Of a DNA stretch of 64,000 nucleotides, positions 1,614 to 50,353 are shown one piece after another (position 1 is the first letter of the stretch; each line of letters starts with the position of its first letter). The notes beneath the pieces were generated by a model. That model ran no database searches and had not been told where the DNA came from. It saw only the letters and a list, made by a program, of their open reading frames with translations. The DNA lies in the IMG/VR virus record IMGVR_UViG_3300042691_055965, positions 62,001-126,000 of that record, one strand, 5' to 3'. The translations under genes and the position numbers were made by a program.

Positions 1614-3425
1614 ATGGGAGCATTATTAGAATCAGGTCTTGTTGGTAACATCGGTCTTAAGCACCTTAAAGTTATCAAAGAAGATACAATTAACAAATGG
1701 GATAAATTAGGATTCCTAGACGGTCTTAAAGGACACATCAAAGAGAACATGGCACAATTATATGAAAACCAAGCGTCTCACCTAATTAACGAAGCCGCGT
1801 CAACTGATAGTTCAGGTTCTTTCGAAACTGTAGTTTTCCCTATCGTTCGTCGTGTATTCTCTAAATTGTTGGCTAACGACATCGTTTCTGTACAAGCAAT
1901 GAACTTACCTATTGGTAAATTGTTCTACTTCGTACCTAAAATCCAAGGTTACACAACTGCAAATCCTACCACAAGTGCAATTCACAACCAACCAATTGGT
2001 GCACCAGGTTCAAACGCAACTACTAACACTGGATATAATGACGGTACACAGTACGCTAAAAATCTTTATGATTTATTTTACGAAGGGGCTGAAGCTGGAT
2101 TAGATCCTCCAGGACTTTTCGATTATTCTAAAGGAAGATGGACTGCTGTGACTTCTCCTACTACTACAGTTTCTTGGAGTAATGGTAATTTAGTACCTAA
2201 CGAAACTGATTATGAAACAACAGGAGTAAGAAAAGTAATTATCAAAATGTGTGGTTTCTATGACGCTGGTGTTGGTAAACTTATGGGTCCTGATGGTTCT
2301 GAAATCGATACTGAAGCATTCCTTTCTGATTTAACAATCACTAAAGGTGCTGGTTTAGGTGTAAGTGCTGACTCACCTTGTACAGTAGGAACAGGTTCTT
2401 TATTATTTAGAGTTGTTACTCAACAATATGGTAAAGGTATTGTTAGTCCTACTTATTCACAAGTATCTACTACATTCCCTAACGGAAATGGTGGTTCTTA
2501 CGATAACATTTGTGATCAAGATGGTTGTATTTTCCTTGAAGTGGATCTTTCTTGTCCTGTATGTGCTGACTGTAACGCTACTTCACTTGATGGTTACACA
2601 GGAGCAACCCTTTCTGCTGTGACTTCAGGAACTGCATTTTCTGCAACTTATAGAAGATATGCGGAACTTGAATTTGAAGATGCTATCGGTGAAGTTTCTT
2701 TCGACCTTGAGTCAGTTACTGTATCTGTAACAGAAAGAAAATTAAGAGCACAATGGTCTCCTGAATTGGCACAAGACGTTTCTGCATTCCACAACATTGA
2801 TGCTGAAGCTGAATTGACAGCTTTATTGTCTGAACAAGTTGCTGCAGAAATCGATCGTGAAATTTTACGTGACTTACGTAAAGGAGCGGCATGGAACCTT
2901 CGTTGGGATTACAACGGATGGAGAAGAATTGCTAACCAAACTTCTTACACTCAAAAAGACTGGAACCAAACTTTGATTACAGCAATCAACCAATTGTCAG
3001 CACAAATCCACAAATCTACTTTAAGAGGTGGTGCTAACTGGATCGTTGTATCTTCTGAAGTTTCAGCAATCTTTGATGATTTAGAATACTTCCACGTATC
3101 TAATGCATCTCCTGAGCAAGATCAGTATAACATGGGTATTGAAAGAGTTGGTACTCTTGCAGGACGTTATCAAGTATACCGTGATCCTTACTTCCCACCA
3201 AACCAAGTTTTGATTGGACACAAAGGAACATCGTTACTTGACACAGGTTATGTTTACGCACCGTATGTACCTCTACAATTAACACCTACAATGTACAATC
3301 CATTCAACTTCACACCTATCAAAGGTATTATGACAAGATACGCTAAGAAAATGGTTAATAACCGTTTCTACGGACGTATCACAGTTGATGGTGTACGTAC
3401 ATTCGATTTAAGAGAATTGAGATAA
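1614..3425 (+). CDS. Major capsid protein (T4 gp23 family) with a large Cys-containing insertion
   Basis: gp23 motifs: VRRVF..L.ANDIVSVQAM, RKLRAQWSPELAQD, H.IDAEAEL..LLSEQ...EIDREI, GYVYAPYVPL, F.P.KGIMTRYA. Confidence 0.95.
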   Translation: MGALLESGLVGNIGLKHLKVIKEDTINKWDKLGFLDGLKGHIKENMAQLYENQASHLINEAASTDSSGSFETVVFPIVRRVFSKLLANDIVSVQAMNLPIGKLFYFVPKIQGYTTANPTTSAIHNQPIGAPGSNATTNTGYNDGTQYAKNLYDLFYEGAEAGLDPPGLFDYSKGRWTAVTSPTTTVSWSNGNLVPNETDYETTGVRKVIIKMCGFYDAGVGKLMGPDGSEIDTEAFLSDLTITKGAGLGVSADSPCTVGTGSLLFRVVTQQYGKGIVSPTYSQVSTTFPNGNGGSYDNICDQDGCIFLEVDLSCPVCADCNATSLDGYTGATLSAVTSGTAFSATYRRYAELEFEDAIGEVSFDLESVTVSVTERKLRAQWSPELAQDVSAFHNIDAEAELTALLSEQVAAEIDREILRDLRKGAAWNLRWDYNGWRRIANQTSYTQKDWNQTLITAINQLSAQIHKSTLRGGANWIVVSSEVSAIFDDLEYFHVSNASPEQDQYNMGIERVGTLAGRYQVYRDPYFPPNQVLIGHKGTSLLDTGYVYAPYVPLQLTPTMYNPFNFTPIKGIMTRYAKKMVNNRFYGRITVDGVRTFDLRELR

Positions 3426-3451
3426 TCAAATCTAAAAATAGAATAAGAAAC

Positions 3452-3478
3452 AAGGGGAATGTAAATTCCCCTTTTTTT
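3452..3478 (+). terminator. Rho-independent terminator after MCP
   Basis: AAGGGGAAT-GTAA-ATTCCCCTT stem-loop followed by a T run. Confidence 0.9.
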
Positions 3479-3482
3479 GTTT

Positions 3483-3618
3483 GTATACGTATACTTTTCC
3501 TACTAACTACGTAGTTTTACTATATCGTTCTAAGTCCTATTTCTGAAATCAAAAATACCCATCCTTCAAAAAGGGGATTCTACTATAATATACTCCTATC
3601 TATTGTTAGAACCAAAAA
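3483..3618 (+). promoter_or_regulatory. Regulatory region of the secreted-protein cassette
   Basis: Perfect palindromes GTATACGTATAC (3483-3494) and AACTACGTAGTT (3505-3516), then a 76-nt element (3543-3618) repeated at 5708-5783. Confidence 0.6.
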
Positions 3619-3627
3619 TTTAACAAT

Positions 3628-5679
3628 ATGAAAAGAGTATTTTTAACAATCGCAACAACTTTAACAATGTTAACCACATTCGCTCAAAATAGAGTATGGG
3701 TTACAATTCCAAACATTGAGTCAGTAAGAACTGAACTACAAACACTAAACATTACTTCTGTTGAAAAGGCGTTTCCATCATCAAAAAGTCAAACACTTCA
3801 AAACGTATATGAATTACAATCAAATGTAAGTTCTACAGTTATTGTTGAATCACTTAAAAAAAGAAACGATTTGTTTGTGAACCCTGAAGTGGGTCCTGAC
3901 TATCAAACACTAGAAACTCCAAACGATTATAACACTGTCGTTCCAAATCAGTGGGCACTTGATATGATTGGTTCAAAAGAGGCATGGGATTACACAAAAG
4001 GTTCAACTGTGACTATTGCTATTACTGACGCTAACTTTTACGTTAATCACGAAGATTTAACAGGAAAATATGATTACATTACATTAAACAATACAAACAC
4101 GAACTACGGACATGGAACTGCAGTTGCTGTAATTGCAGGTGGAAATACTAATAACACTGTTGGAACTTCATCTATTGGTTATAATTCAAGATTACAACTA
4201 AGAACAATGTCTTATAATGAAATGCTTGATGCCACATATTCAGGAGCTAAAGTTATAAACGCAAGTTGGGCATCTTCTTGTTCTTTCAATTCATATGCTC
4301 AGATGGTAATTGATGAGGTTTATTCTAACGGAACTGTAATTGTTGCTTCAGCAGGAAATGGTTCTACTTGTGGTGGTTCTTTTAATCTTGTTTATCCTGC
4401 TTCATACAACCACGTAATATCTGTTTCATCTGTGGGGTTTGCAAATAACCACGAAAGATTCATGGGAGACCCAAACACAACTCACCAACACAATTCAATG
4501 GTTGATATTTGTGCACCAGGATATGACGTTCCATTAACTACTTCACCTGGGGTATACGTCACAGGAAATGGAACTTCATTTGCATCTCCTTTTGTTTCAG
4601 GAACTGTCGCTCTTATGTTATCTGTTAATCCTTGTTTAACTGTTGATAATATTGAGTATATCTTAAAAGAAACCGCAAACTCTGATATGTATTTAATTAA
4701 CCCAAATTATCAGGGATTACTTGGAGCAGGAACATTGAATTCTCATTTGGCTGTGAAAATGGCAAAAGAATTCAACACAATCAGTGGAACATTCAAAACT
4801 AATGTTGATTGTGTGTCAGGAGATAAGATTGTATCTGTATTGAACCTTGACGGAACAACACCTTATAACTATGAATGGATGAATGGTGATATTAACGAAA
4901 CAATTTCAGTATCAAACGACGGGTTTGTTTTAGTTCAAATTGTTGATTCGAATGGTTGTAGATTTACTGATTCAGTTTATGTTGAAAAATACGAAAAAAT
5001 TACAAGTGAATCTTTGGTTTCTGACGTAAAATGTTTTGGGATGTCAAATGGTGAAATTTCTGTAAACATTTCAGGTGGTGAATTTGTATCTGATGCTGTA
5101 TGGAATAACGGTGTTGTTGGTAACACTTTAACAAATTTAACTTCAGGTAATTATATTTTTACAGTTGTTGATGGATTTGATTGTGTTCACTCTGACACTT
5201 TAAGTGTAAGACAACCTGAACTACTTGTATCAAACATAACTTCTGTGAACCCTACAATCACTTCTGATGGTTCAATTAACATTACAGTTAATGGTGGAAC
5301 ATTACCATACACTTACGAATGGAACAATGGTGACACAACACAAAACTTAAATAATCTTTCTGAAGGATTCTATGAACTTCTTGTAACAGACGCAAATGGT
5401 TGTATGACTTCTGAGAATACAATGTTAAACACCCAAAATACCTCATCTGTGAGTGAATTAACTTCAAATGAACTACTTGTATACCCTAACCCTTCAAATG
5501 GTTCTGTAACGATTAAAACAGGTAAGGATGATGATTGTAACTTAACAATCACAAACATCAACGGACAAATTGTTGTAACTCAATCTACCTTTATCGGTGA
5601 GGTGTCTGTAAGTGATTTATGTGAAGGTGTTTACCTTGTGACAGTAAATAATGTAACTCAAAAGTTAGTTGTTAAGTAA
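3628..5679 (+). CDS. Secreted S8 (subtilisin-like) peptidase with SprB-like repeats and T9SS type A C-terminal domain
   Basis: Signal peptide; catalytic motifs AITD, GHGTAVA, GTSFASP; GGTxPYTYEWNNG repeats; C-terminal VYPNPSNG...GVYLV...KLVVK. Confidence 0.9.
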   Translation: MKRVFLTIATTLTMLTTFAQNRVWVTIPNIESVRTELQTLNITSVEKAFPSSKSQTLQNVYELQSNVSSTVIVESLKKRNDLFVNPEVGPDYQTLETPNDYNTVVPNQWALDMIGSKEAWDYTKGSTVTIAITDANFYVNHEDLTGKYDYITLNNTNTNYGHGTAVAVIAGGNTNNTVGTSSIGYNSRLQLRTMSYNEMLDATYSGAKVINASWASSCSFNSYAQMVIDEVYSNGTVIVASAGNGSTCGGSFNLVYPASYNHVISVSSVGFANNHERFMGDPNTTHQHNSMVDICAPGYDVPLTTSPGVYVTGNGTSFASPFVSGTVALMLSVNPCLTVDNIEYILKETANSDMYLINPNYQGLLGAGTLNSHLAVKMAKEFNTISGTFKTNVDCVSGDKIVSVLNLDGTTPYNYEWMNGDINETISVSNDGFVLVQIVDSNGCRFTDSVYVEKYEKITSESLVSDVKCFGMSNGEISVNISGGEFVSDAVWNNGVVGNTLTNLTSGNYIFTVVDGFDCVHSDTLSVRQPELLVSNITSVNPTITSDGSINITVNGGTLPYTYEWNNGDTTQNLNNLSEGFYELLVTDANGCMTSENTMLNTQNTSSVSELTSNELLVYPNPSNGSVTIKTGKDDDCNLTITNINGQIVVTQSTFIGEVSVSDLCEGVYLVTVNNVTQKLVVK

Positions 5680-5707
5680 TAACACTTAATCATTTTAATA
5701 ACAACTA

Positions 5708-5783
5708 CTGAACTTCAAAATACCTACCCTCCGAAAACAGGATTTAACAACATACATCACCTATATATTTGTAGAAACAAAAA
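5708..5783 (+). promoter_or_regulatory. Second copy of the 76-nt upstream element, including a Bacteroidota -7 box TATATTTG (5764-5771)
   Basis: Ungapped alignment to 3543-3618, about 53/76 identical by manual count. Confidence 0.65.
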
Positions 5784-5810
5784 ATAACTAACAATTAAAA
5801 AATAAAAAAA

Positions 5811-6638
5811 ATGAAAACAAAAATTTTAAACACAATTCTTTTTACACTTCTAACAGTTGTAACATTCGCACAAACTAAAGTACCTTTCAATCTTGGGGTT
5901 TCTCAAACTAACCCAACTTGTGTTAACTTTTCTGATGGTGAAATTACCGCACTTCCTTCAGGTGGTTTTCCTCCTTATACTTACCAATGGAGTAATGGTG
6001 ATACCACTCAAACGATATCAAATCTTTCGGCAGGAAATTATTCAGTAACTGTAACAGATTCTTACAACAGTACAATCGCAGCATTTCTTACAGTTGACAA
6101 TCCACTTCCTATCACAATTTCAGGAACACAATCAAATGTAACTTCTTTTGGTTTGTCTAACGGACAAATAGATATTGTAGATATTTCAAATACAACAGGT
6201 TCATTTACTTACCAATGGTTTACTGCGGGTGGTAGTTTTCAAAACCAAGGTAATTTAGACCAACAAGGATTAACTTCAGGTTATTATAAAATAATGGTTA
6301 CAGATTCTATTGGTTGTGTAGGAATCGGTTATTTTACAATTTCACAACCAAACCCATCATTACCAACTCTTAACAATCCTAACTTGATTAGTCCAAGTAT
6401 TTCTAACAACACATCAGCCATTTCAACTTATCCAAACCCATCAAATGGTAATTTCACAATAGAGACTAAAGAAAATGTAAGTGAAATTAGAATTGTGAAT
6501 ACAATCAATGGTGAAGAAGTTTATAACGACAAATCATCTTTATCAAAATTATATGTTGATAATCTTAAAACAGGTATCTATATGATTTATGTAACAACAG
6601 AAAAAGGAACAGAAACAAAAAGAATAACTATACTTTAA
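5811..6638 (+). CDS. Secreted SprB-repeat protein with T9SS type A CTD
   Basis: Signal peptide; GGFPPYTYQWSNG..TQTISNLSAGNYSVTVTD; TYPNPSNGNF...GIYMI...KRITIL. Confidence 0.88.
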   Translation: MKTKILNTILFTLLTVVTFAQTKVPFNLGVSQTNPTCVNFSDGEITALPSGGFPPYTYQWSNGDTTQTISNLSAGNYSVTVTDSYNSTIAAFLTVDNPLPITISGTQSNVTSFGLSNGQIDIVDISNTTGSFTYQWFTAGGSFQNQGNLDQQGLTSGYYKIMVTDSIGCVGIGYFTISQPNPSLPTLNNPNLISPSISNNTSAISTYPNPSNGNFTIETKENVSEIRIVNTINGEEVYNDKSSLSKLYVDNLKTGIYMIYVTTEKGTETKRITIL

Positions 6639-6660
6639 TAATTAAAATAAAAAAAAGAAC

Positions 6661-7257
6661 ATGAAAAATTTAATCATCACATTAGCATCATTATTTTTAA
6701 CGGTATCTGTATCATTTTCACAACAGATGTCATTACAAACAACCAAAATAGACCCATCATGTAACGGGTACAATAACGGAGAAATTATTATTGATATAAC
6801 AGGAGGTGTTGAACCTTACACAATAAATGGTTTACAGATAAATGGAACTCAGTTTATTGCAACTAATTTATCTGGTGGACAATATGTTTTTGATGTAACC
6901 GACTCTAATTTGAGTTCTTCAGTTGCTACTTTAACATTGACAGATCCACAACCGTTGGTAATACAAATATTAAAAACTGACGTTACGACATTTGGTGGAA
7001 ATAATGGTTCTGCGGATGTCACAATATTAAACGGTACTGCTACATATAATTGGACTGGCAATGGCTCAGGTATTATCCCAAATCAAGAAGATCAATTTTT
7101 GTTAACGGCAGGAATATACAATATTGAAATAACGGCGATTGATGGTTGTGTGTATAATAAGAGAATTATAATCGATCAACCATCCGCAAGTGGTTTTCCG
7201 TCTTCATATAACCCTAATACACAAGGTTTTCAACAAAATACAATTTCAAACAATTAA
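6661..7257 (+). CDS. Secreted SprB-repeat protein lacking a CTD (paralogue of 5811-6638)
   Basis: Signal peptide; two SprB-like repeats colinear with the upstream gene; ends at ISNN. Confidence 0.8.
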   Translation: MKNLIITLASLFLTVSVSFSQQMSLQTTKIDPSCNGYNNGEIIIDITGGVEPYTINGLQINGTQFIATNLSGGQYVFDVTDSNLSSSVATLTLTDPQPLVIQILKTDVTTFGGNNGSADVTILNGTATYNWTGNGSGIIPNQEDQFLLTAGIYNIEITAIDGCVYNKRIIIDQPSASGFPSSYNPNTQGFQQNTISNN

Positions 7258-7321
7258 AAATAACAAAGTCGAAAAAAGAATAATAATTCTTTGATTATTG
7301 TTGGTTCCACAAAAAAGAAAT

Positions 7322-7345
7322 CCCCCAAGAATTTGGGGGTTTTTT
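7322..7345 (+). terminator. Rho-independent terminator
   Basis: CCCCCAA-GAAT-TTGGGGG followed by a T run. Confidence 0.88.
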
Positions 7346-7404
7346 AATTTAAAATTAACATTGTTTTCTTATATTTTTGATACTTATAATTAAAAGGTCA
7401 TATA

Positions 7405-8361
7405 ATGAAAAATTTATTGTTAATGTTTGCGTTAATGGTTTCGCAAATTCTATCTTCCCAAACAACCATCTATTCTGAAAATTTTGGTACAGTAACTTCT
7501 AACACTTCTGTCAGTTCATTTAATGGTTGGCAAAATTCAAGCCCAATTACATACACAGGAAATGTAGATGTAAGGAGGACACAACCATCTTCACCAACAC
7601 CAAATGATGACAATGCTAATGTTTTTTTTACAAATTCCACACCAAGAAGTTTTACAATTTCAGGAATCAACACATCAACGTATTCTGAAGTATTTTTAAC
7701 ATTAAATCATTTCAAAAGTACAATAGCTGGTAATAATGAATTATTAATACAAGTTAGTTCGGATGGTATTAATTATACAACTTTATCTTATAGTCGTCCA
7801 ACTGGAGGTGGAACGGCAATATGGAGATTAATAAGTCCATCAGGAACAATTCCAATTACTAATAACTTAAGAATTAGATTTACTCAAACATCAACATCAA
7901 CTCAATTCAGAATTGATGATATAACATTAACAAGTCCTGTATCTTTGCCTGTTGAACTCACATATTTTGATGGTGTAAAACAAGATGGTTTTAACTTATT
8001 GAAGTGGCAAACGGCATCAGAATTTAATTCAAGTCACTTTATAATCGAAAAAACAACCACAGGTGATTTTAAAAATTCAACAATTGTTGGAAATATTTTG
8101 GGTTCAGGATATTCACAAAACATTATAGATTATGATTTACTTGACATGAAAGTAGAAAATGTAATTAATTACTATAGACTTATTCAATACGATTTTGACG
8201 GTAAAACAAAAGTATATCCAATAATAGCAATTGATAACAGACATCAAAAAGAAGTCGAAAAAATTGTTGATTTGTCAGGTAAAGAAGTTAACGAATATTA
8301 TAAAGGGATAGTTATCATTTATTATAAAAATGGTGAATTTGTTAAAACTTATCAATATTAA
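7405..8361 (+). CDS. Secreted beta-rich protein with an LPVEL Ig-like domain and short T9SS-like CTD
   Basis: Signal peptide; LPVELTYFDG...W.TASE.N...YYRL.Q.D.DG domain typical of Bacteroidota T9SS cargo; C-terminal KIVDLSGKEV...IIYY..G. Confidence 0.75.
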   Translation: MKNLLLMFALMVSQILSSQTTIYSENFGTVTSNTSVSSFNGWQNSSPITYTGNVDVRRTQPSSPTPNDDNANVFFTNSTPRSFTISGINTSTYSEVFLTLNHFKSTIAGNNELLIQVSSDGINYTTLSYSRPTGGGTAIWRLISPSGTIPITNNLRIRFTQTSTSTQFRIDDITLTSPVSLPVELTYFDGVKQDGFNLLKWQTASEFNSSHFIIEKTTTGDFKNSTIVGNILGSGYSQNIIDYDLLDMKVENVINYYRLIQYDFDGKTKVYPIIAIDNRHQKEVEKIVDLSGKEVNEYYKGIVIIYYKNGEFVKTYQY

Positions 8362-8387
8362 TTATTAACTGTTAAATATTAAACAAG

Positions 8388-8417
8388 AAGGGGTGTATGA
8401 TAATTCACCCCTTTTTT
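8388..8417 (+). terminator. Rho-independent terminator
   Basis: AAGGGGTG/CACCCCTT stem followed by a T run. Confidence 0.85.
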
Positions 8418-8461
8418 GGTATTTTCACTACGTATTTTTACGTATATCTTTCTATTTATAG

Positions 8462-8525
8462 TAAAGACACGACCGGCCCATGGTAGATGGGGGTTCCACC
8501 ACAAGGTTCTTCAAGTGTGACTTTA
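8462..8525 (+). ncRNA. Candidate structured 5' leader RNA
   Basis: GC-rich island right after TATTTATA (8453-8460); nested stems TAAAG-ACAC/GTGT-GA-CTTTA, GACC/GGTT, CCCAT/ATGGG. Confidence 0.35.
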
Positions 8526-8553
8526 GTTTTAAACCCACAAAATTAAAGGTCAT

Positions 8554-10545
8554 ATGAAAAAACTTGCATTACTCCTATTTACGTTATTAGTAAATTTTAA
8601 TCTACTTTCACAATTTTGTTCAACAACAGGTCTTGTGAATATGGGTGTTATTACACCAACAGGGACATTCCAAAATGTGTCAAACGCATCATCAGCAAAA
8701 AGGTATTGGAGATTCACGGCAACAGCTGGATGTACTTACGATTTTTCTACTTGTAATAGTGCGTTTACAAATGATACATATTTAAGACTATACTCAACCG
8801 CTACAGGTGGAACTGTATTGGCTCAGAATGACGACAACGGTCCGTTTTGTGGTGGAACAAAGGCATCACTTACTTGGGTTTGTCCTGCAAATGGAACGTA
8901 TTCAATACTTGTTACAAATTATAGTTGTGCAAATCTAAGTGCAACAACAATATTAAGTTACAGAGTCACTTGTGCTCCTGTATATAATCCTTGTTCTTCG
9001 ATTACAACAATTGCAAGTTGTGGAACTAATGTTTCTACAACAATGTCAGGTGGAGGGGCAGGGTGGAATGTCAGTACCTGTGGATTTTCAACACCAGGAC
9101 AAGAAAGAATATTCCAATTCACACCTACTCAGACAGGAACATATACTCTTAATGTGACATCAATCACAGGAGGATACGTTGATTTCTTTTGGAAACCTGC
9201 GTCAGGTGGGTGTGGTAGTACAGGGTGGAACTGTATTGATGACATTAGCTTTACAGGAAGTTTTAATGGAGTAACCCCAATGACATTTACTGCTGGTGTT
9301 ACATATTATATTCTTTTAGACCCTGAAACAACAGGTACATATAATGTAACATTTAATTTGGGTTGTCCAATTGTTGCACCTGCTAATGATTTAATATGTA
9401 ATGCGACTACAATTACTTGTGGTTCATTAGTCGGGGGAACTACTGTGGGTTCAACCCTAACAGGTGCAGGTGAAGGAGGTTCTTGTGGGACCACACAAAC
9501 GACGGGAGGTGTGTGGTATAAAGTTGTTGGCACCGGAGATGTAATGACCGCATCTCTGTGTGTCACAGCTTGGGACAGTAAGATGTCAGTGTTTCAAGGT
9601 TCTTGTACAACACCTGTTTGTGTAGGTGGTATAGATGATAACGGACCGTCGTGTACGGGGACTGCAGCATCGTATTCTTGGACTTCAACACCAGGTGTAA
9701 CATATTTTATACTTGTACACGGATATAGTACAACATCAACTTTTAGTTTAGCATTTACGTGTTCACCTCCACCACCACCAGGTCCTTGTTTGAATACAAC
9801 AGCTTGGAGTGTAGAAAACCTACCAACAACCACAACACCTGACGTAACCACATTGTGTTCAGCGGGTAATGGACAATACACAGATGAATATAGCCAATGG
9901 AATAATGGTGTTGCTGGAGTAACTTATACTGTATTATCAAGTATACCTACTGATTGGGTTACAGTTACAGTTTCAACACCTAACGGAACAGTCGTTTCTT
10001 ATGGTTCATCTCCTTTAGATTTTACGGCATCAATAAATGCAACTTACTATGTTCACATAAATGCAAATGGGTATTGTTTAGATGATGCTAATTGTAGAAA
10101 CGTAACAGTATCAAGAATAAGTGCGTTACCAATAGAATTAATAAGTTTTGATGGTGTTAATAATGGTAGTAGTAACTTATTATATTGGTTAACTGCTTCT
10201 GAACACAACAATAACTATTTTACCTTGGAAAGGTCTAATGATGGTGAAAATTGGGAAGAAGTGACAAAAATAGTTGCCGCAGGGCAATCAACACAAGAAC
10301 TTTCTTATTCATATTCAGATGAAACATTTTCAAGAAATATGATTAATTATTATAGACTTTCACAAACTGACTATGATGGAACTACTGAATTTTTTAACAT
10401 AGTGTCTTTAGATAATACACTTTCAAATAAAAAAGTGGTAAAGTATATTAATATTACAGGACAAGAAATTGATGTTATGTCTGCAACAGGTGTTTATTTC
10501 AAAGTTTATGATGACGGTTCAATGAAAAGAGTTTATAAACAATAA
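8554..10545 (+). CDS. Secreted Cys-rich multidomain protein (PPC-like domains, LPIEL domain, short T9SS-like CTD)
   Basis: Signal peptide; DTYLRLY..NDDNG and PANDLICNA modules; ALPIELISFDG domain; C-terminus similar to 7405-8361. Confidence 0.78.
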   Translation: MKKLALLLFTLLVNFNLLSQFCSTTGLVNMGVITPTGTFQNVSNASSAKRYWRFTATAGCTYDFSTCNSAFTNDTYLRLYSTATGGTVLAQNDDNGPFCGGTKASLTWVCPANGTYSILVTNYSCANLSATTILSYRVTCAPVYNPCSSITTIASCGTNVSTTMSGGGAGWNVSTCGFSTPGQERIFQFTPTQTGTYTLNVTSITGGYVDFFWKPASGGCGSTGWNCIDDISFTGSFNGVTPMTFTAGVTYYILLDPETTGTYNVTFNLGCPIVAPANDLICNATTITCGSLVGGTTVGSTLTGAGEGGSCGTTQTTGGVWYKVVGTGDVMTASLCVTAWDSKMSVFQGSCTTPVCVGGIDDNGPSCTGTAASYSWTSTPGVTYFILVHGYSTTSTFSLAFTCSPPPPPGPCLNTTAWSVENLPTTTTPDVTTLCSAGNGQYTDEYSQWNNGVAGVTYTVLSSIPTDWVTVTVSTPNGTVVSYGSSPLDFTASINATYYVHINANGYCLDDANCRNVTVSRISALPIELISFDGVNNGSSNLLYWLTASEHNNNYFTLERSNDGENWEEVTKIVAAGQSTQELSYSYSDETFSRNMINYYRLSQTDYDGTTEFFNIVSLDNTLSNKKVVKYINITGQEIDVMSATGVYFKVYDDGSMKRVYKQ

Positions 10546-10587: not shown

Positions 10588-11307
10588 ATGGACTTAAATA
10601 ATATAATAAAAAAAGTAGTTAAAGAAGCAAATTCCGATAGGTATGCCGGTTCATATAACGGACCTTTGTCTATGGGTGAAATCGATTGGGGTAAACAAGA
10701 ACTTGGACCTTTCGATACTAAAGTATCTAATTTCTTCAATGCCGAATTAGAATATGATAGTTATGACGGTTCATTAGATATGAGTAAAAAAAAGGCTAAA
10801 AGTCTTGAAACTAAAGCCAAAAAAATATCTTTATATAACAAAAAACACAAAACACCTAACGACGAAGATGGTGGAATAATAAATCAAACACCAGGTAAAA
10901 ACTTGAAGTTTGTTCCATTAAAAGAATGGGTTGATTTGGATTCAATTGTTTTAAATGAAGATTTGGCAGTATGGTTTGGAACAAAAAAGAAAGGTAAAGG
11001 TACTAAACAACCACAAGGTCCTTGGGTTAACATTTGTAGGAAAAAGAAAGGTGGAGGACATCCACCGTGTGGTAGACCTGAAGGTGAATCGAAGGGTTAT
11101 CCTAAATGTAGAGCCGTAGGTGTTGCAAGAAACATGACAGATGTACAAAAAAGAGCAGCATGTCAACAAAAAAGAAAAGCGGAAAAACAAGATACACAAA
11201 CAGGAAAAGGACAAAAACCTGTAATGACATCATATAAACCAAAAAAGAAAAGAACTCAAAAGGAATCTGTTGATTTTCTTGTAAAGAGTATTTTATCTAT
11301 TCTTTAA
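10588..11307 (+). CDS. Hypothetical protein, probable internal head protein with a basic Cys-containing domain
   Basis: Late motif upstream; N-terminal IIKKVVKE; EDLAVWFG...WVNIC...PCGR...YPKCR domain. Confidence 0.6.
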   Translation: MDLNNIIKKVVKEANSDRYAGSYNGPLSMGEIDWGKQELGPFDTKVSNFFNAELEYDSYDGSLDMSKKKAKSLETKAKKISLYNKKHKTPNDEDGGIINQTPGKNLKFVPLKEWVDLDSIVLNEDLAVWFGTKKKGKGTKQPQGPWVNICRKKKGGGHPPCGRPEGESKGYPKCRAVGVARNMTDVQKRAACQQKRKAEKQDTQTGKGQKPVMTSYKPKKKRTQKESVDFLVKSILSIL

Positions 11308-20398: not shown

Positions 20399-21145
20399 TT
20401 ATGAATTGTGAATTCTTTTGAGTGTGTCTAAATATAAAGTTTTGTATTTTTTTAAGTAAATTCTAATTTCTTTAGTGTTTAGATTAGTCATTTCTCTTAA
20501 CGATAACAATACAATGTTTTTGTTGAATTTATTATTATCATTACCAATGAAAATATTTCCATAATTGTCAAATAATTCAATAAGTGCGTGACCTAGTTTT
20601 AATTCATTTTCATTTTCTATTTTATTGTGAACGTAAAGTCTTAAGTCACTCAAAAATGTATCTATAACTTTTTCGGCATCAATTTTTTCAAATTCCAAAT
20701 AATAAATCATATCAGGACGATTTTCTAATGTTGATGAAATATCTTCATAAGAAATTTTTCTATTTGTGTCTTTCTGATCTTTTTGGATTTGCCCCATAAG
20801 ATAGTTTTTACAAATAGTACCAAAATAAGAATACGCCTTCTTATTTTTTGCCGGTTTAAATTTATCAATTTTTGTCATTAGAAAAGAATGTGTGTCTGAA
20901 TGATTATCTTCAAAATTCATATCTCTTCTATATAATTTGTATCTTCGGATAATTGACTCTATCATTTTGTTCAATGGTTCCCGAAGACACGTATTATAGA
21001 TAAATTCTTTTTCTTCACGAGAGTTAGATAAAAGGTAATCTTTAACTGCCTGCTCTTCACGAACGTCAAAGTAATTATTTTTTTTTACTTTATTCGTCTT
21101 TTTAAATTCTATACTGGTTGTTTCATTTTCACCTGAAATAAACAT
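20399..21145 (-). CDS. Phage late-transcription sigma factor (gp55-like)
   Basis: KNNYF N-terminus; region 2-like KFKP...KAYSYFGTICKNY, comparable to gp55 F.P..S.NPFAYFTQI. Confidence 0.7.
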   Translation of the reverse strand: MFISGENETTSIEFKKTNKVKKNNYFDVREEQAVKDYLLSNSREEKEFIYNTCLREPLNKMIESIIRRYKLYRRDMNFEDNHSDTHSFLMTKIDKFKPAKNKKAYSYFGTICKNYLMGQIQKDQKDTNRKISYEDISSTLENRPDMIYYLEFEKIDAEKVIDTFLSDLRLYVHNKIENENELKLGHALIELFDNYGNIFIGNDNNKFNKNIVLLSLREMTNLNTKEIRIYLKKYKTLYLDTLKRIHNS

Positions 21146-50251: not shown

Positions 50252-50353
50252 AATATTTTTCTTTTTTTATTTACTTTTTTAACTGATTTTAAATTAATTT
50301 TCTTTCCCATCAACAATTACGTATAAAATAGATATTTATAGTAAAAAGAAAAA

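What the first reader, a model, noticed from the sequence alone, without database searches (positions are those of the whole stretch)
3483..5783. Repeated 76-nt upstream element and TACGTA palindromes define a cargo regulon
3543-3618 and 5708-5783 align without gaps (~70% identity). Both contain AAAATACC, a pseudo-palindrome (ATCCTTCAAAAAGGGGAT / ACCCTCCGAAAACAGGAT) and CCTAT.TATT just before the start. TACGTA-cored palindromes occur at 3483-3494 and 3505-3516 (22 bp apart). At 8429-8444, TACGTAT-TT-TTACGTA has the 7-2-7 geometry of NarL/LuxR-family sites and sits just before the late motif of the fifth gene. Genes 7405 and 8554 also share the leader AAAGGTCATAT. This suggests the cassette is co-regulated by a response regulator rather than constitutive.
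Basis: partly seen in the sequence, partly recalled or inferred. Interest (0 to 1): 0.6.

Follow-up and report, generated by a model that had tools for sequence, protein, structure and literature searches.

The report
Regulatory DNA of phage-borne secreted-protein genes
The repeated sequences are real control regions in front of bacterial-type secreted-protein genes carried by a large T4-like phage: a duplicated promoter module, TACGTA sites also found at the bacterial versions of the gene, and a hairpin that hides the protease gene's start codon. The proposed NarL/LuxR regulator is not supported.

Summary
3543-3618 and 5708-5783 match at 53/76 without gaps, the best of 990 upstream-region pairs in the 229-kb phage genome.

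The 76-nt repeat is a promoter-like module: A-tract, GGWTTY, exactly 16 nt, then TAnnTATT. It stands before two paralogous T9SS cargo genes and keeps gap-free spacing in diverged relatives.

TACGTA boxes precede the S8-peptidase gene in 15 of 25 distinct metagenomic phage versions. They also precede its chromosomal homologues in freshwater Flavobacteriales MAGs (20 of 27 sites lie in the 220-nt upstream windows; 0.28 expected). They therefore look like an operator for an unidentified host factor.

One feature is new. The invariant TATCTAT box overlaps the 5' arm of a covarying hairpin whose 3' arm covers the start codon, as in T4 genes e, soc, 49 and I-TevI.

The NarL/LuxR 7-2-7 reading fails. 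Box spacings are 10, 12 and 22 bp, and the phage encodes no GerE or LytTR domain. The shared features link genes in pairs, following paralogy, and do not define one regulon. No transcription start is mapped, and no binding factor is identified.

The parts
3454..3478 (+). Intrinsic terminator of the major capsid gene (GGGGAA..TTCCCC plus a T-run)
   Evidence: Read directly from the sequence. An equivalent terminator is present in the relatives.
3483..3494 (.). TACGTA box 1 (GTATACGTATAC, a perfect palindrome). It is the left boundary of the S8 regulatory unit.
   Evidence: Similarity between the window and L069 begins exactly here. The box is conserved in L067, L069 and L086.
3505..3516 (.). 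TACGTA box 2 (AACTACGTAGTT, a perfect palindrome; family consensus yTACGTAgTTTyAC)
   Evidence: It lies about 86-89 nt upstream of the TATCTAT box in all lineages that have it. Bacterial homologues carry CTAC(G/T)TAG-type boxes.
3543..3618 (+). 76-nt module, copy 1 (upstream of the S8 peptidase-SprB-T9SS CTD gene 3628-5679)
   Evidence: 53/76 identical to copy 2; top of 990 pairs; gap-free six-way alignment A6.
3568..3580 (+). A-tract plus GGATTC, a -35-like block
   Evidence: AAA, G and T columns are invariant in A6. Exactly 16 nt separate this block from the box in every lineage.
3597..3605 (+). TATCTATTG box: -10/-7-like, invariant TATCTAT
   Evidence: Invariant in 19 distinct relatives. 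It is one mismatch from the phage-wide TATTTAT(T/A) motif and one inserted base away from the Bacteroidota TAHHTTTG consensus (PMC6847099).
3599..3631 (+). Hairpin: 5' arm 3599-3610, loop 3611-3618, 3' arm 3619-3631 including the ATG at 3628-3630
   Evidence: -7.5 kcal/mol, z = -3.9, 0 of 200 shuffles fold as well. All 19 variants fold alike. Covariation is seen.
5708..5783 (+). 76-nt module, copy 2 (upstream of the SprB-T9SS CTD gene 5811-6638; g6661 follows 22 nt later)
   Evidence: The orthologous module in L087 is 67% identical.
5740..5745 (+). GGATTT, a -35-like block, 16 nt before the box
5762..5771 (+). TATATATTTG box. It contains TATATTTG, an exact Bacteroidota sigma-A -7 consensus. 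No hairpin reaches the start codon here.
   Evidence: The consensus is taken from PMC6847099.
7372..7379 (+). TATTTTTG, a host-type -7 box upstream of g7405. The orthologue has TACATTTG.
7393..7403 (+). AAAGGTCATAT leader of g7405
   Evidence: two copies in the genome. It is only partly conserved in L087.
8390..8417 (+). Intrinsic terminator after g7405
   Evidence: Read directly from the sequence. Conserved in L087.
8429..8444 (.). Two TACGTA boxes 10 bp apart, upstream of g8554
   Evidence: In L087 the first box is kept and the second is TACTTA.
8453..8459 (+). TATTTAT, the phage-wide late-like promoter motif, 14 nt after the second TACGTA. The geometry matches that at 50318-50339.
8516..8554 (+). 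Hairpin in the g8554 leader (loop AAACCCAC). Its 3' arm is the AAAGGTCATAT motif and reaches the ATG at 8554.
   Evidence: L087 keeps the hairpin through compensatory changes (UUUAG/UUAAA versus UUAUG/UAUAA).

Best explanation
Setting. [quoted passage not shown] The genes sit in the variable slot between the major capsid gene and a conserved core gene (10588) of a T4-like jumbo phage of freshwater Flavobacteriales. Three layers can be separated.

1. The 76-nt repeat is a duplicated promoter module: A-tract, GGWTTY, exactly 16 nt, then TAnnTATT. It is kept in front of two paralogues, the S8 peptidase gene and g5811. The similarity and the spacing constraint are shown. Promoter activity is inferred.

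2. The TACGTA palindromes lie about 90 nt upstream of that box. They are binding sites for an unidentified dimeric host transcription factor and were inherited with the bacterial gene's regulatory region. Through them, synthesis of the phage protease would depend on host state. Conservation in phage and bacterial copies is shown. Binding and its effect are inferred.

3. In the S8 gene only, the box overlaps the 5' arm of an RNA hairpin whose 3' arm covers the start codon.
- Transcripts that enter from upstream, for example read-through from the very strong capsid gene, would fold the hairpin and stay untranslated.
- Transcripts that start just after the box would lack the 5' arm and be translated. 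With F. johnsoniae geometry the start falls near 3610, the last base of the 5' arm.
- This is the logic of T4 genes e, soc, 49 and I-TevI. The hairpin and its covariation are shown. The start site and the bypass are inferred.
For: Setting:
- The major capsid protein is Gp23-like. The cargo proteins carry Peptidase_S8, SprB and Por_Secre_tail domains.
- A homologue of gene 10588 follows the capsid region in most relatives, so 3628-10545 is a variable slot.

Promoter module:
- The 76-nt pair is the top of 990 upstream-region pairs.
- Six modules from four lineages align without a gap. AAA, G, T and TA..TATT columns are invariant.
- GGWTTY-N16-TATNTAT occurs only at 3575 and 5740, apart from one canonical TATTTAT site at 158371.
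- TATCTAT is invariant in 19 distinct S8 upstream regions, even where the stem register shifts in L117 and L121.
- TATTTAT is the phage-wide start-proximal motif. 41% of its copies lie within 60 nt upstream of a start, against 4-12% for its single-base variants. It has no -35 signal.

TACGTA boxes:
- The only two close pairs in the genome are in this cassette.
- Five of the 7 close pairs in 1.05 Mb of relatives' loci precede S8 homologues.
- 15 of 25 distinct phage S8 upstream regions carry at least one box.
- In bacterial homologue loci, 20 of 27 TACGTA sites fall inside the 220-nt upstream windows, where 0.28 are expected.
- Those loci are chromosomal, with icd, gmk, proS and msrA as neighbours.
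- In one Lishizhenia MAG all four places with paired boxes lie in intergenic DNA. Three demonstrably precede secreted-protein genes. At the fourth, a contig edge repeating the S8 box arrangement, the downstream gene is off the contig.

Hairpin:
- All 19 variants fold it.
- RNAalifold finds only this helix in 211 alignment columns. Pair types are GC 12, GU 2, AU 2, UA 2 at one position and GC 11, UA 5, GU 1 at the next.
- The covariation score is 0.123 against 0.052 for shuffles, reached by 3 of 500 shuffles.
- z = -3.9 in the window.

Precedents:
- T4 genes e, soc, 49 and I-TevI (PMC3014915).
- Secondary structure at the translation initiation region tunes translation in SD-less F. johnsoniae (PMC6847099).
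Against: - No transcription start is mapped. The one RNA run holds only a contig over 6347-6701.
- TATCTAT is itself rare near gene starts in this phage: 3 of 83 copies. It matches neither TATTTAT nor TAHHTTTG exactly, so the polymerase or sigma factor that would read it is unknown.
- A good terminator precedes the region, so the amount of read-through is unknown.
- The g8554 hairpin lies downstream of its promoter motif and cannot be bypassed by it. Start-codon hairpins here may therefore simply damp translation.
- Ten of 25 phage S8 versions lack TACGTA. Four of those still keep the box and the hairpin.
- Genome-wide, paired TACGTA is no more frequent than a reversed control pattern in the three MAGs tested. 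Any regulon is therefore small.
- The related sequences are not phylogenetically independent, so the statistics overstate significance.
Confidence: 0.55

Rival explanations
1. One reading: the cassette is one regulon controlled by a NarL/LuxR-type (or LytTR-type) response regulator that binds 7-2-7 TACGTA heptamer pairs.
For: 8429-8444 can be read as TACGTAT-TT-TTACGTA. The boxes are conserved. The phage encodes a receiver-domain protein.
Against: - The heptamers fit TACYYMT at only 6/7 and 5/7 positions.
- Box spacing varies: 10, 12 and 22 bp in phages and 8 to 38 bp in bacteria.
- The orthologous second box in L087 is TACTTA.
- The phage has no GerE/LuxR or LytTR domain, and its receiver protein has no output domain.
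- Only two of the five cassette genes have the boxes.
Confidence: 0.05
2. A constitutive structured leader. Transcription starts upstream, near the TACGTA boxes. TATCTAT is RNA: the base of a 5'-UTR hairpin, or the site of an RNA-binding protein. The hairpin always damps or gates translation, and no promoter lies inside it.
For: - g8554 has a start-codon hairpin that lies wholly downstream of its TATTTAT motif.
- TATCTAT is not a general promoter word in this phage.
- G.U pairs show that the pairing acts at the RNA level.
Against: - The paralogous g5811 module keeps the box and the -35-like block at identical spacing but has no hairpin. Its box is an exact host -7 consensus.
- TATCTAT stays invariant where it lies outside the stem, in L117 and L121.
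- RNAalifold finds no other conserved structure upstream.
- No promoter-like word lies next to the TACGTA boxes: TAGTTTTA violates the G-5 and H positions of the consensus in PMC6847099.
Confidence: 0.2
3. PeSL-like recombination modules. The terminator-plus-promoter composites and the repeated 76-nt element mainly serve as homology patches that shuffle cargo genes in the hyperplastic region.
For: - The cassette lies in a variable slot whose content differs among relatives.
- Each unit begins with a terminator followed by promoter-like DNA.
- Similarity to L069 starts exactly at TACGTA box 1, next to unrelated DNA.
- PeSLs are described in PMC2839356 and PMC4122927.
Against: - The two copies are only 70% identical, which makes them poor substrates for homologous recombination.
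- The core occurs only twice in the genome, whereas PeSLs are many and near-identical.
- Block-wise conservation with fixed spacing, and the presence of TACGTA in bacterial chromosomes, point to regulatory constraint.
Confidence: 0.1
4. Neutral remnants of duplication. The upstream similarities (S8 with g5811, g7405 with g8554) are leftovers of tandem gene duplication and have no present function.
For: - The genes are paralogues. g5811 aligns to S8 residues 469-673 at 33% identity and has a similar signal peptide. g7405 and g8554 share a C-terminal domain.
- Orthologous upstream regions are 59-73% identical, against 65-69% for the coding DNA.
Against: - The duplication predates the split from L087, where the S8 protein is 65% identical. 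Even so, the motif blocks and the exact spacing persist in both copies and in lineages at about 50% protein identity.
- TATCTAT is invariant in 19 lineages.
- Compensatory changes keep the hairpin paired.
- The last ~45 nt before the S8 ATG are identical between the window and L087.
Confidence: 0.08

Closest known systems
T4 genes e (lysozyme), soc, 49 and I-TevI: an inhibitory hairpin at the translation initiation region, with a late promoter in the DNA that encodes its 5' strand (PMC3014915, section 29; McPheeters 1986 as cited there)
   Same: A T4-like phage. The RNA helix covers the start codon. A promoter-like box, one mismatch from the phage-wide late-like motif, overlaps the 5' arm. Transcripts that begin after the box would therefore escape the hairpin. 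The stem is kept by compensatory changes across relatives.
   Different: The host phylum has no Shine-Dalgarno sequence, so only the AUG and the -1 to -10 region are occluded. The box is TATCTAT, not T4's TATAAATA. It is paired with a -35-like block at a fixed spacing, whereas T4 late promoters have none. The gene is host-derived secreted cargo, not a lysis or homing gene. No 5' ends have been mapped here.
Host PhoBR control of cyanophage pstS/phoA and the Pho boxes in S-PM2d (PMC10976474 and its reference 13)
   Same: A T4-like phage carries a host-derived gene whose upstream region keeps the host regulator's recognition motif. Phage cargo expression would therefore follow host physiology.
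   Different: The factor here is unknown. The motif (TACGTA / CTACKTAG palindromes) matches no described Bacteroidota regulator that I could find. The cargo is a T9SS-secreted protease, not a nutrient-uptake gene. No binding or expression data exist.
Bacteroidota sigma-A promoters, -33 TTTG / -7 TAHHTTTG (PMC6847099)
   Same: g5811 (TATATTTG) and g7405 (TATTTTTG; TACATTTG in L087) carry exact -7 boxes 30-40 nt before the ATG, followed by A-rich leaders.
   Different: The S8 box TATCTATTG fits only if one base is removed. No TTTG sits at -33. The conserved upstream block is A-tract plus GGWTTY.
PeSLs, the composite terminator/promoter cassettes of T4-type hyperplastic regions (PMC2839356, PMC4122927)
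   Same: Terminator-then-promoter composites flank variable genes in a hyperplastic region. One inter-phage breakpoint lies at the edge of the unit.
   Different: There are only two diverged copies, not a family of near-identical repeats. The elements are gene-specific and shared with bacterial chromosomes.
NarL 7-2-7 heptamer sites (TACYYMT-N2-AKRRGTA; recalled from memory)
   Same: A TAC..GTA core, and one pair with a 2-bp gap between the heptamers.
   Different: The heptamer fit is imperfect. Spacing varies at homologous sites. The phage has no LuxR-type regulator. Each box is a self-contained palindrome.

Membership tests
NarL/LuxR 7-2-7 operator | Inverted TACYYMT heptamers separated by 2 bp | tested here: not met
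   At 8429-8444 the fit is 6/7 and 5/7. The S8 boxes are 22 bp apart, or 12 bp in relatives. The orthologue L087 has TACTTA as its second box.
NarL/LuxR 7-2-7 operator | A cognate GerE/LuxR-type (or LytTR-type) regulator available in the phage | tested here: not met
   PF00196 and PF04397 give no match in the 229-kb record. There is only a receiver-only 145-aa protein. The record is estimated 76% complete, so absence is not absolute. Host regulators were not examined.
T4-type hairpin over the translation initiation region with an internal late promoter | An RNA helix that sequesters the start codon or initiation region | tested here: met
   Hairpin 3599-3631 includes the ATG. z = -3.9. It is present in all 19 variants and covaries.
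T4-type hairpin over the translation initiation region with an internal late promoter | [quoted passage not shown] | tested here: inconclusive
   The invariant TATCTAT box overlaps the 5' arm and is one mismatch from the phage-wide TATTTAT. No 5' end is mapped.
T4-type hairpin over the translation initiation region with an internal late promoter | Longer upstream transcripts enter the gene and are poorly translated | not testable with these tools
   This needs RNA 5'-end and ribosome data from infected cells. A terminator (3454-3478) stands between the capsid gene and the S8 gene.
Bacteroidota sigma-A promoter | A -7 box TAHHTTTG about 5 nt upstream of the start site | tested here: inconclusive
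   The match is exact at g5811 (5764-5771) and g7405 (7372-7379). It is not met at S8, where TATCTATTG has one extra base.
Host-regulator-controlled phage auxiliary gene (Pho-box type) | The same cis motif upstream of the phage gene and of its host homologues | tested here: met
   TACGTA boxes occur in 15 of 25 distinct phage versions and in 10 of 20 bacterial loci. 20 of 27 bacterial sites lie in the upstream windows, where 0.28 are expected.
Host-regulator-controlled phage auxiliary gene (Pho-box type) | An identified regulator that binds the motif and changes expression | not testable with these tools
   No candidate could be named. The PorX footprints differ. An ECF sigma factor is a neighbour only in the Lishizhenia clade.
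PeSL | Many near-identical terminator/promoter repeats that mark indel junctions | tested here: not met
   The core occurs only twice in the genome, at 70% identity. One junction, in L069, coincides with the edge of the unit.
Known RNA family (riboswitch or leader) | A match to an Rfam covariance model, or a multi-helix conserved structure | tested here: not met
   No Rfam hit comes near its gathering score in 3300-8700. RNAalifold finds only the one helix.

The most novel reading that the evidence does not exclude
CTAC(G/T)TAG palindromes may define an undescribed regulon for secreted T9SS proteins in freshwater Flavobacteriales (Crocinitomicaceae/Lishizhenia type). A family of T4-like jumbo phages would have captured a protease gene together with this operator. 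They would then have added their own promoter box and an insulating hairpin. The phage would thereby make a secreted protease only when the host's own secretion programme is on, independent of the strong capsid transcription next door.
Probability: 0.3. Interest if true: 0.65.

Novelty: new member of a known kind. Interest (0 to 1): 0.5.

Why it matters
Almost nothing is known about gene control in T4-like phages of Bacteroidota. Their hosts use different promoters and have no Shine-Dalgarno sequence.

- This locus offers testable elements: a candidate phage promoter word (TATTTAT) and a variant promoter with fixed -35/-10-like spacing.
- It also holds a hairpin with comparative support that appears to reuse the T4 gene e strategy in an SD-less setting.
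- The conservation of TACGTA boxes between phage and bacterial copies of a T9SS protease gene would be a second example, outside cyanophage Pho boxes, of a phage leaving an acquired gene under host control.
- The same conservation points to an uncharacterised host regulator of secreted proteins.

All of this is inferred from sequence.

Tried and rejected
- Rfam scan of 3300-8700 at a permissive threshold: only sub-threshold, terminator-like hits. No tRNA or tmRNA in the window.
- A riboswitch-like structure across the whole S8 upstream region: RNAalifold finds only the start-codon hairpin.
- Near-identical phage records: none in the INPHARED collection. L081-L085 in IMG/VR are the same phage and were not counted as independent.
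- LuxR and LytTR domains in the phage: none.
- PorX as the TACGTA binder: the published porT footprints are unrelated.
- Literature search for TACGTA with Flavobacterium: nothing relevant.
- By eye I tested sigma-54 (-24/-12), ECF (AAC-N16/17-CGT) and sigma-A readings of the TACGTA region. None fits consistently across lineages.
- Small proteins downstream of the TACGTA pairs in the Lishizhenia and other Flavobacteriales MAGs examined: no Pfam or NCBIfam family.
- Transcript evidence: one poly(A) metatranscriptome holds only a 355-nt identical contig at 6347-6701. It gives no start sites.
- Genome-wide enrichment of paired TACGTA in three MAGs: not above a reversed-pattern control. Only the positions of the pairs are informative.
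Full report
**Context**

The window is bases 62001-126000 of a 229,188-bp, 31% G+C virus record.
- Gene 1614-3425 encodes a Gp23-type major capsid protein. The closest named relatives are only about 43% identical: Flavobacterium phage immuto and a Microcystis phage.
- IMG/VR holds hundreds of metagenomic relatives. The 80 loci kept have 74-88% capsid identity.
- Downstream of the capsid gene lie five + strand genes:
  - 3628-5679: Peptidase_S8 + SprB repeats + T9SS type A sorting domain.
  - 5811-6638: SprB + sorting domain.
  - 6661-7257: SprB.
  - 7405-8361 and 8554-10545: no family match; they share a C-terminal domain.
- The next gene (10588-11307) is a conserved core gene that follows the capsid region in most relatives. 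The cassette therefore fills a variable (hyperplastic) slot.

**Observation**

- The two 76-nt stretches share 53/76 positions without gaps. Among 990 pairs of upstream regions of this genome that is the highest score (next 47; mean 36.9, sd 3.6). The strict core occurs only twice in the genome.
- TACGTA occurs 31 times in the genome. Six copies are intergenic, although only about 4% of the genome is intergenic. The only two close pairs are at 3486/3508 and 8429/8439, each just after a terminator.
- AAAGGTCATAT occurs only at 7393 and 8545.

**Comparative test**

- L081-L085 are the same phage and were ignored.
- Searching IMG/VR with an alignment of S8 homologues gave 41 loci and 24 distinct upstream regions. 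With L069 from the capsid search that makes 25.
- Nineteen of the 25, nearly all directly after the capsid terminator, share one architecture (alignment A4):
  - TACGTA box(es), consensus yTACGTAgTTTyAC;
  - a block ...AAAA..GGWTTY;
  - exactly 16 nt;
  - an invariant TATCTAT;
  - then an A-rich leader.
- No gap interrupts the stretch between the A-tract and the box in any sequence, although the spacer sequence itself varies.
- A six-way alignment of S8 modules from four lineages and g5811 modules from two phages is also gap-free over the 77 columns shared by the modules. AAA, G, T and TA..TATT columns are invariant.
- Such a spacing constraint is typical of -35/-10-type promoter geometry.
- GGWTTY-N16-TATNTAT occurs in this genome only at these two genes and once with a canonical box.

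**What the box resembles**

- TATTTAT(T/A) is the dominant start-proximal word of this phage. It has 193 copies. 41% lie within 60 nt upstream of a start, mostly 11-25 nt from the ATG, against 4-12% for TATCTAT, TATATAT and TATGTAT.
- It has no upstream -35 signal, like T4 late promoters.
- The S8 box differs from it at one base. The g5811 box TATATATTTG contains TATATTTG, an exact Bacteroidota sigma-A -7 element (TAHHTTTG; PMC6847099).
- g7405 also has an exact -7 box (TATTTTTG; TACATTTG in L087). g8554 has a canonical TATTTAT.
- The cassette's promoters are therefore heterogeneous, which argues against one common regulon.

**The hairpin**

- In every one of the 19 S8 upstream regions, the box's 3' half plus the next bases pair with a sequence that ends 0-4 nt before the ATG. 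In the window the pairing includes the ATG.
- Observed arm pairs are CTATTGGT/ACCAATAG, CTATTGGT/ACTAATAG (a G.U pair), CTATTAGT/ACTAATAG, CTATTGTT/AACAATAG, TATTGTTA/TAACAATA and TATGTGT/ACACATA.
- RNAalifold on the 211-column alignment predicts only this helix. Pair types are GC 12, GU 2, AU 2, UA 2 at one position and GC 11, UA 5, GU 1 at the next.
- A pair count on a second alignment, which includes four misaligned rows, still gives 85% paired cells and a covariation score reached by 3 of 500 shuffles.
- In the window the hairpin (3599-3631) has z = -3.9.
- TATCTAT remains invariant where the stem register moves off it (L117, L121). The box is therefore constrained by something other than pairing.
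- With the F. johnsoniae geometry (start 5 nt after the G of the -7 box), transcription would begin near 3610, the last base of the 5' arm.
- That is the arrangement described for T4 e, soc, 49 and I-TevI. There, transcripts from upstream fold an inhibitory helix, and late transcripts that start inside the region encoding its 5' strand are translated (PMC3014915).
- The g5811 module has no such hairpin.

**TACGTA boxes**

- In 1.05 Mb of relatives' loci there are 198 TACGTA and 7 close pairs. Five of the pairs precede S8 homologues.
- 15 of 25 distinct S8 upstream regions have at least one box and 9 have a pair. Where present, the proximal box lies about 86-89 nt before TATCTAT.
- Similarity between the window and L069 begins exactly at box 1, next to unrelated DNA.
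- Full-length bacterial homologues of the S8-SprB-CTD protein (38-49% identity) occur in freshwater Flavobacteriales MAGs: Crocinitomicaceae, Lishizhenia and unclassified Flavobacteriia. Their neighbours are housekeeping genes.
- In these loci 20 of 27 TACGTA sites lie in the 220-nt upstream windows, where 0.28 are expected. Ten of 20 loci, from at least five lineages, have them.
- The bacterial copies lack TATCTAT and the hairpin. They have ordinary ..TTTG -7 boxes.
- In one Lishizhenia MAG all four places with paired boxes lie in intergenic DNA. One precedes the S8 gene and two precede 112-aa signal-peptide paralogues. The fourth, at a contig edge, repeats the S8 box arrangement, and its gene is off the contig.
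- Genome-wide, pairs are not commoner than a reversed control, so any regulon is small.
- I could not name the factor. The PorX footprints differ. An ECF sigma factor is divergent from the gene only in Lishizhenia.

**The NarL/LuxR claim**

- Spacings between box centres are 10, 12 and 22 bp in phages and vary more widely in bacteria.
- The second box at 8439 is TACTTA in L087.
- The phage has no GerE or LytTR domain. It encodes a receiver-only 145-aa protein, a sigma-70-family factor of 271 aa and a weak sigma-like protein of 248 aa.

**Paralogy**

- g5811 aligns with the C-terminal part of the S8 protein (33% identity) and has a related signal peptide. g7405 and g8554 share a C-terminal domain.
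- The pairwise shared upstream features follow these pairs.
- The duplication predates the split from L086/L087, which carry the same gene order. Orthologous upstream regions are 59-73% identical, similar to the coding DNA (65-69%). Conservation is concentrated in the motif blocks, and the last ~45 nt before the S8 ATG are identical.

**AAAGGTCATAT**

- At g8554 this motif is the 3' arm of a second hairpin that reaches the start codon (8516-8554, loop AAACCCAC). L087 keeps the hairpin through compensatory changes.
- This hairpin lies downstream of the TATTTAT motif and cannot be bypassed by it. That tempers the T4-e reading and keeps alive the rival in which such hairpins simply damp translation.

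**Limits**

- Everything rests on sequence comparison.
- The only RNA run found holds one identical 355-nt contig (6347-6701) and gives no start sites.
- Related sequences are not independent, so the P values are indicative only.

Noticed in passing
window 8488-8517: A 30-nt G+C-rich block in the long g8554 leader (TGGGGGTTCC...CAAGTG) is 100% identical in the orthologue L087, although the flanks differ. Its function is unknown. The whole leader's folding energy is not unusual (z = -0.8).
   Followed up: partly
window 7303-7310 and 8492-8499: The octamer GGTTCCAC lies upstream of both g7405 and g8554, and also in L087. Its reverse complement contains GGAACC, which resembles an ECF-type -35 element on the other strand.
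   Followed up: no
whole genome G000 (e.g. window 10563, 12734, 20385, 43827, 62648): The phage-wide TATTTAT(T/A) motif most often starts only 11-13 nt before the ATG. If it is a -10/-7-type promoter box, many phage mRNAs would be leaderless or nearly so.
   Followed up: partly
window 50318-50339 and 8439-8462: Both sites show the same composite: TACGTATA, then 14-15 nt from the start of TACGTA to TATTTATAGTAAA. One precedes a 1039-aa gene with no family match and the other precedes g8554. TACGTA may also act as an upstream element of some late-type promoters.
   Followed up: no
G000:195721-196536, G000:12270-12707, window 20399-21145 (-): The phage encodes a full sigma-70-family factor (regions 1.2, 2 and 4; phrog_351), a stand-alone response-regulator receiver domain, and a weak sigma-region-2-like 248-aa protein that could be the gp55 analogue.
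   Followed up: partly
L147 and L150 (Lishizhenia MAG G001, contig C4, around 59-61 kb): Tandem paralogous genes for 110-112-aa signal-peptide proteins with no Pfam or NCBIfam match. Two of them are preceded by two or three TACGTA boxes about 115-150 nt upstream.
   Followed up: partly
L141 1166-1714 (-) and L130 1175-1723 (-): In the Lishizhenia clade an ECF sigma factor gene is divergently transcribed from the bacterial S8-SprB-CTD gene, with the TACGTA boxes in the shared intergenic region. This is not so in the other clades.
   Followed up: partly
window 6347-6701: A 355-nt contig from a poly(A)-selected metatranscriptome is identical to the g5811/g6661 junction. This is compatible with co-transcription, but DNA carry-over cannot be excluded.
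   Followed up: partly
G000 record: IMG/VR classes this T4-like record as a provirus with 76% CheckV completeness. The host-like cargo cassette may have triggered the provirus call.
   Followed up: no
L107/L108 2781-2798 and 3681-3698: One relative carries two TACGTA pairs 900 bp apart. The second precedes its S8 homologue. The gene after the first was not examined.
   Followed up: no
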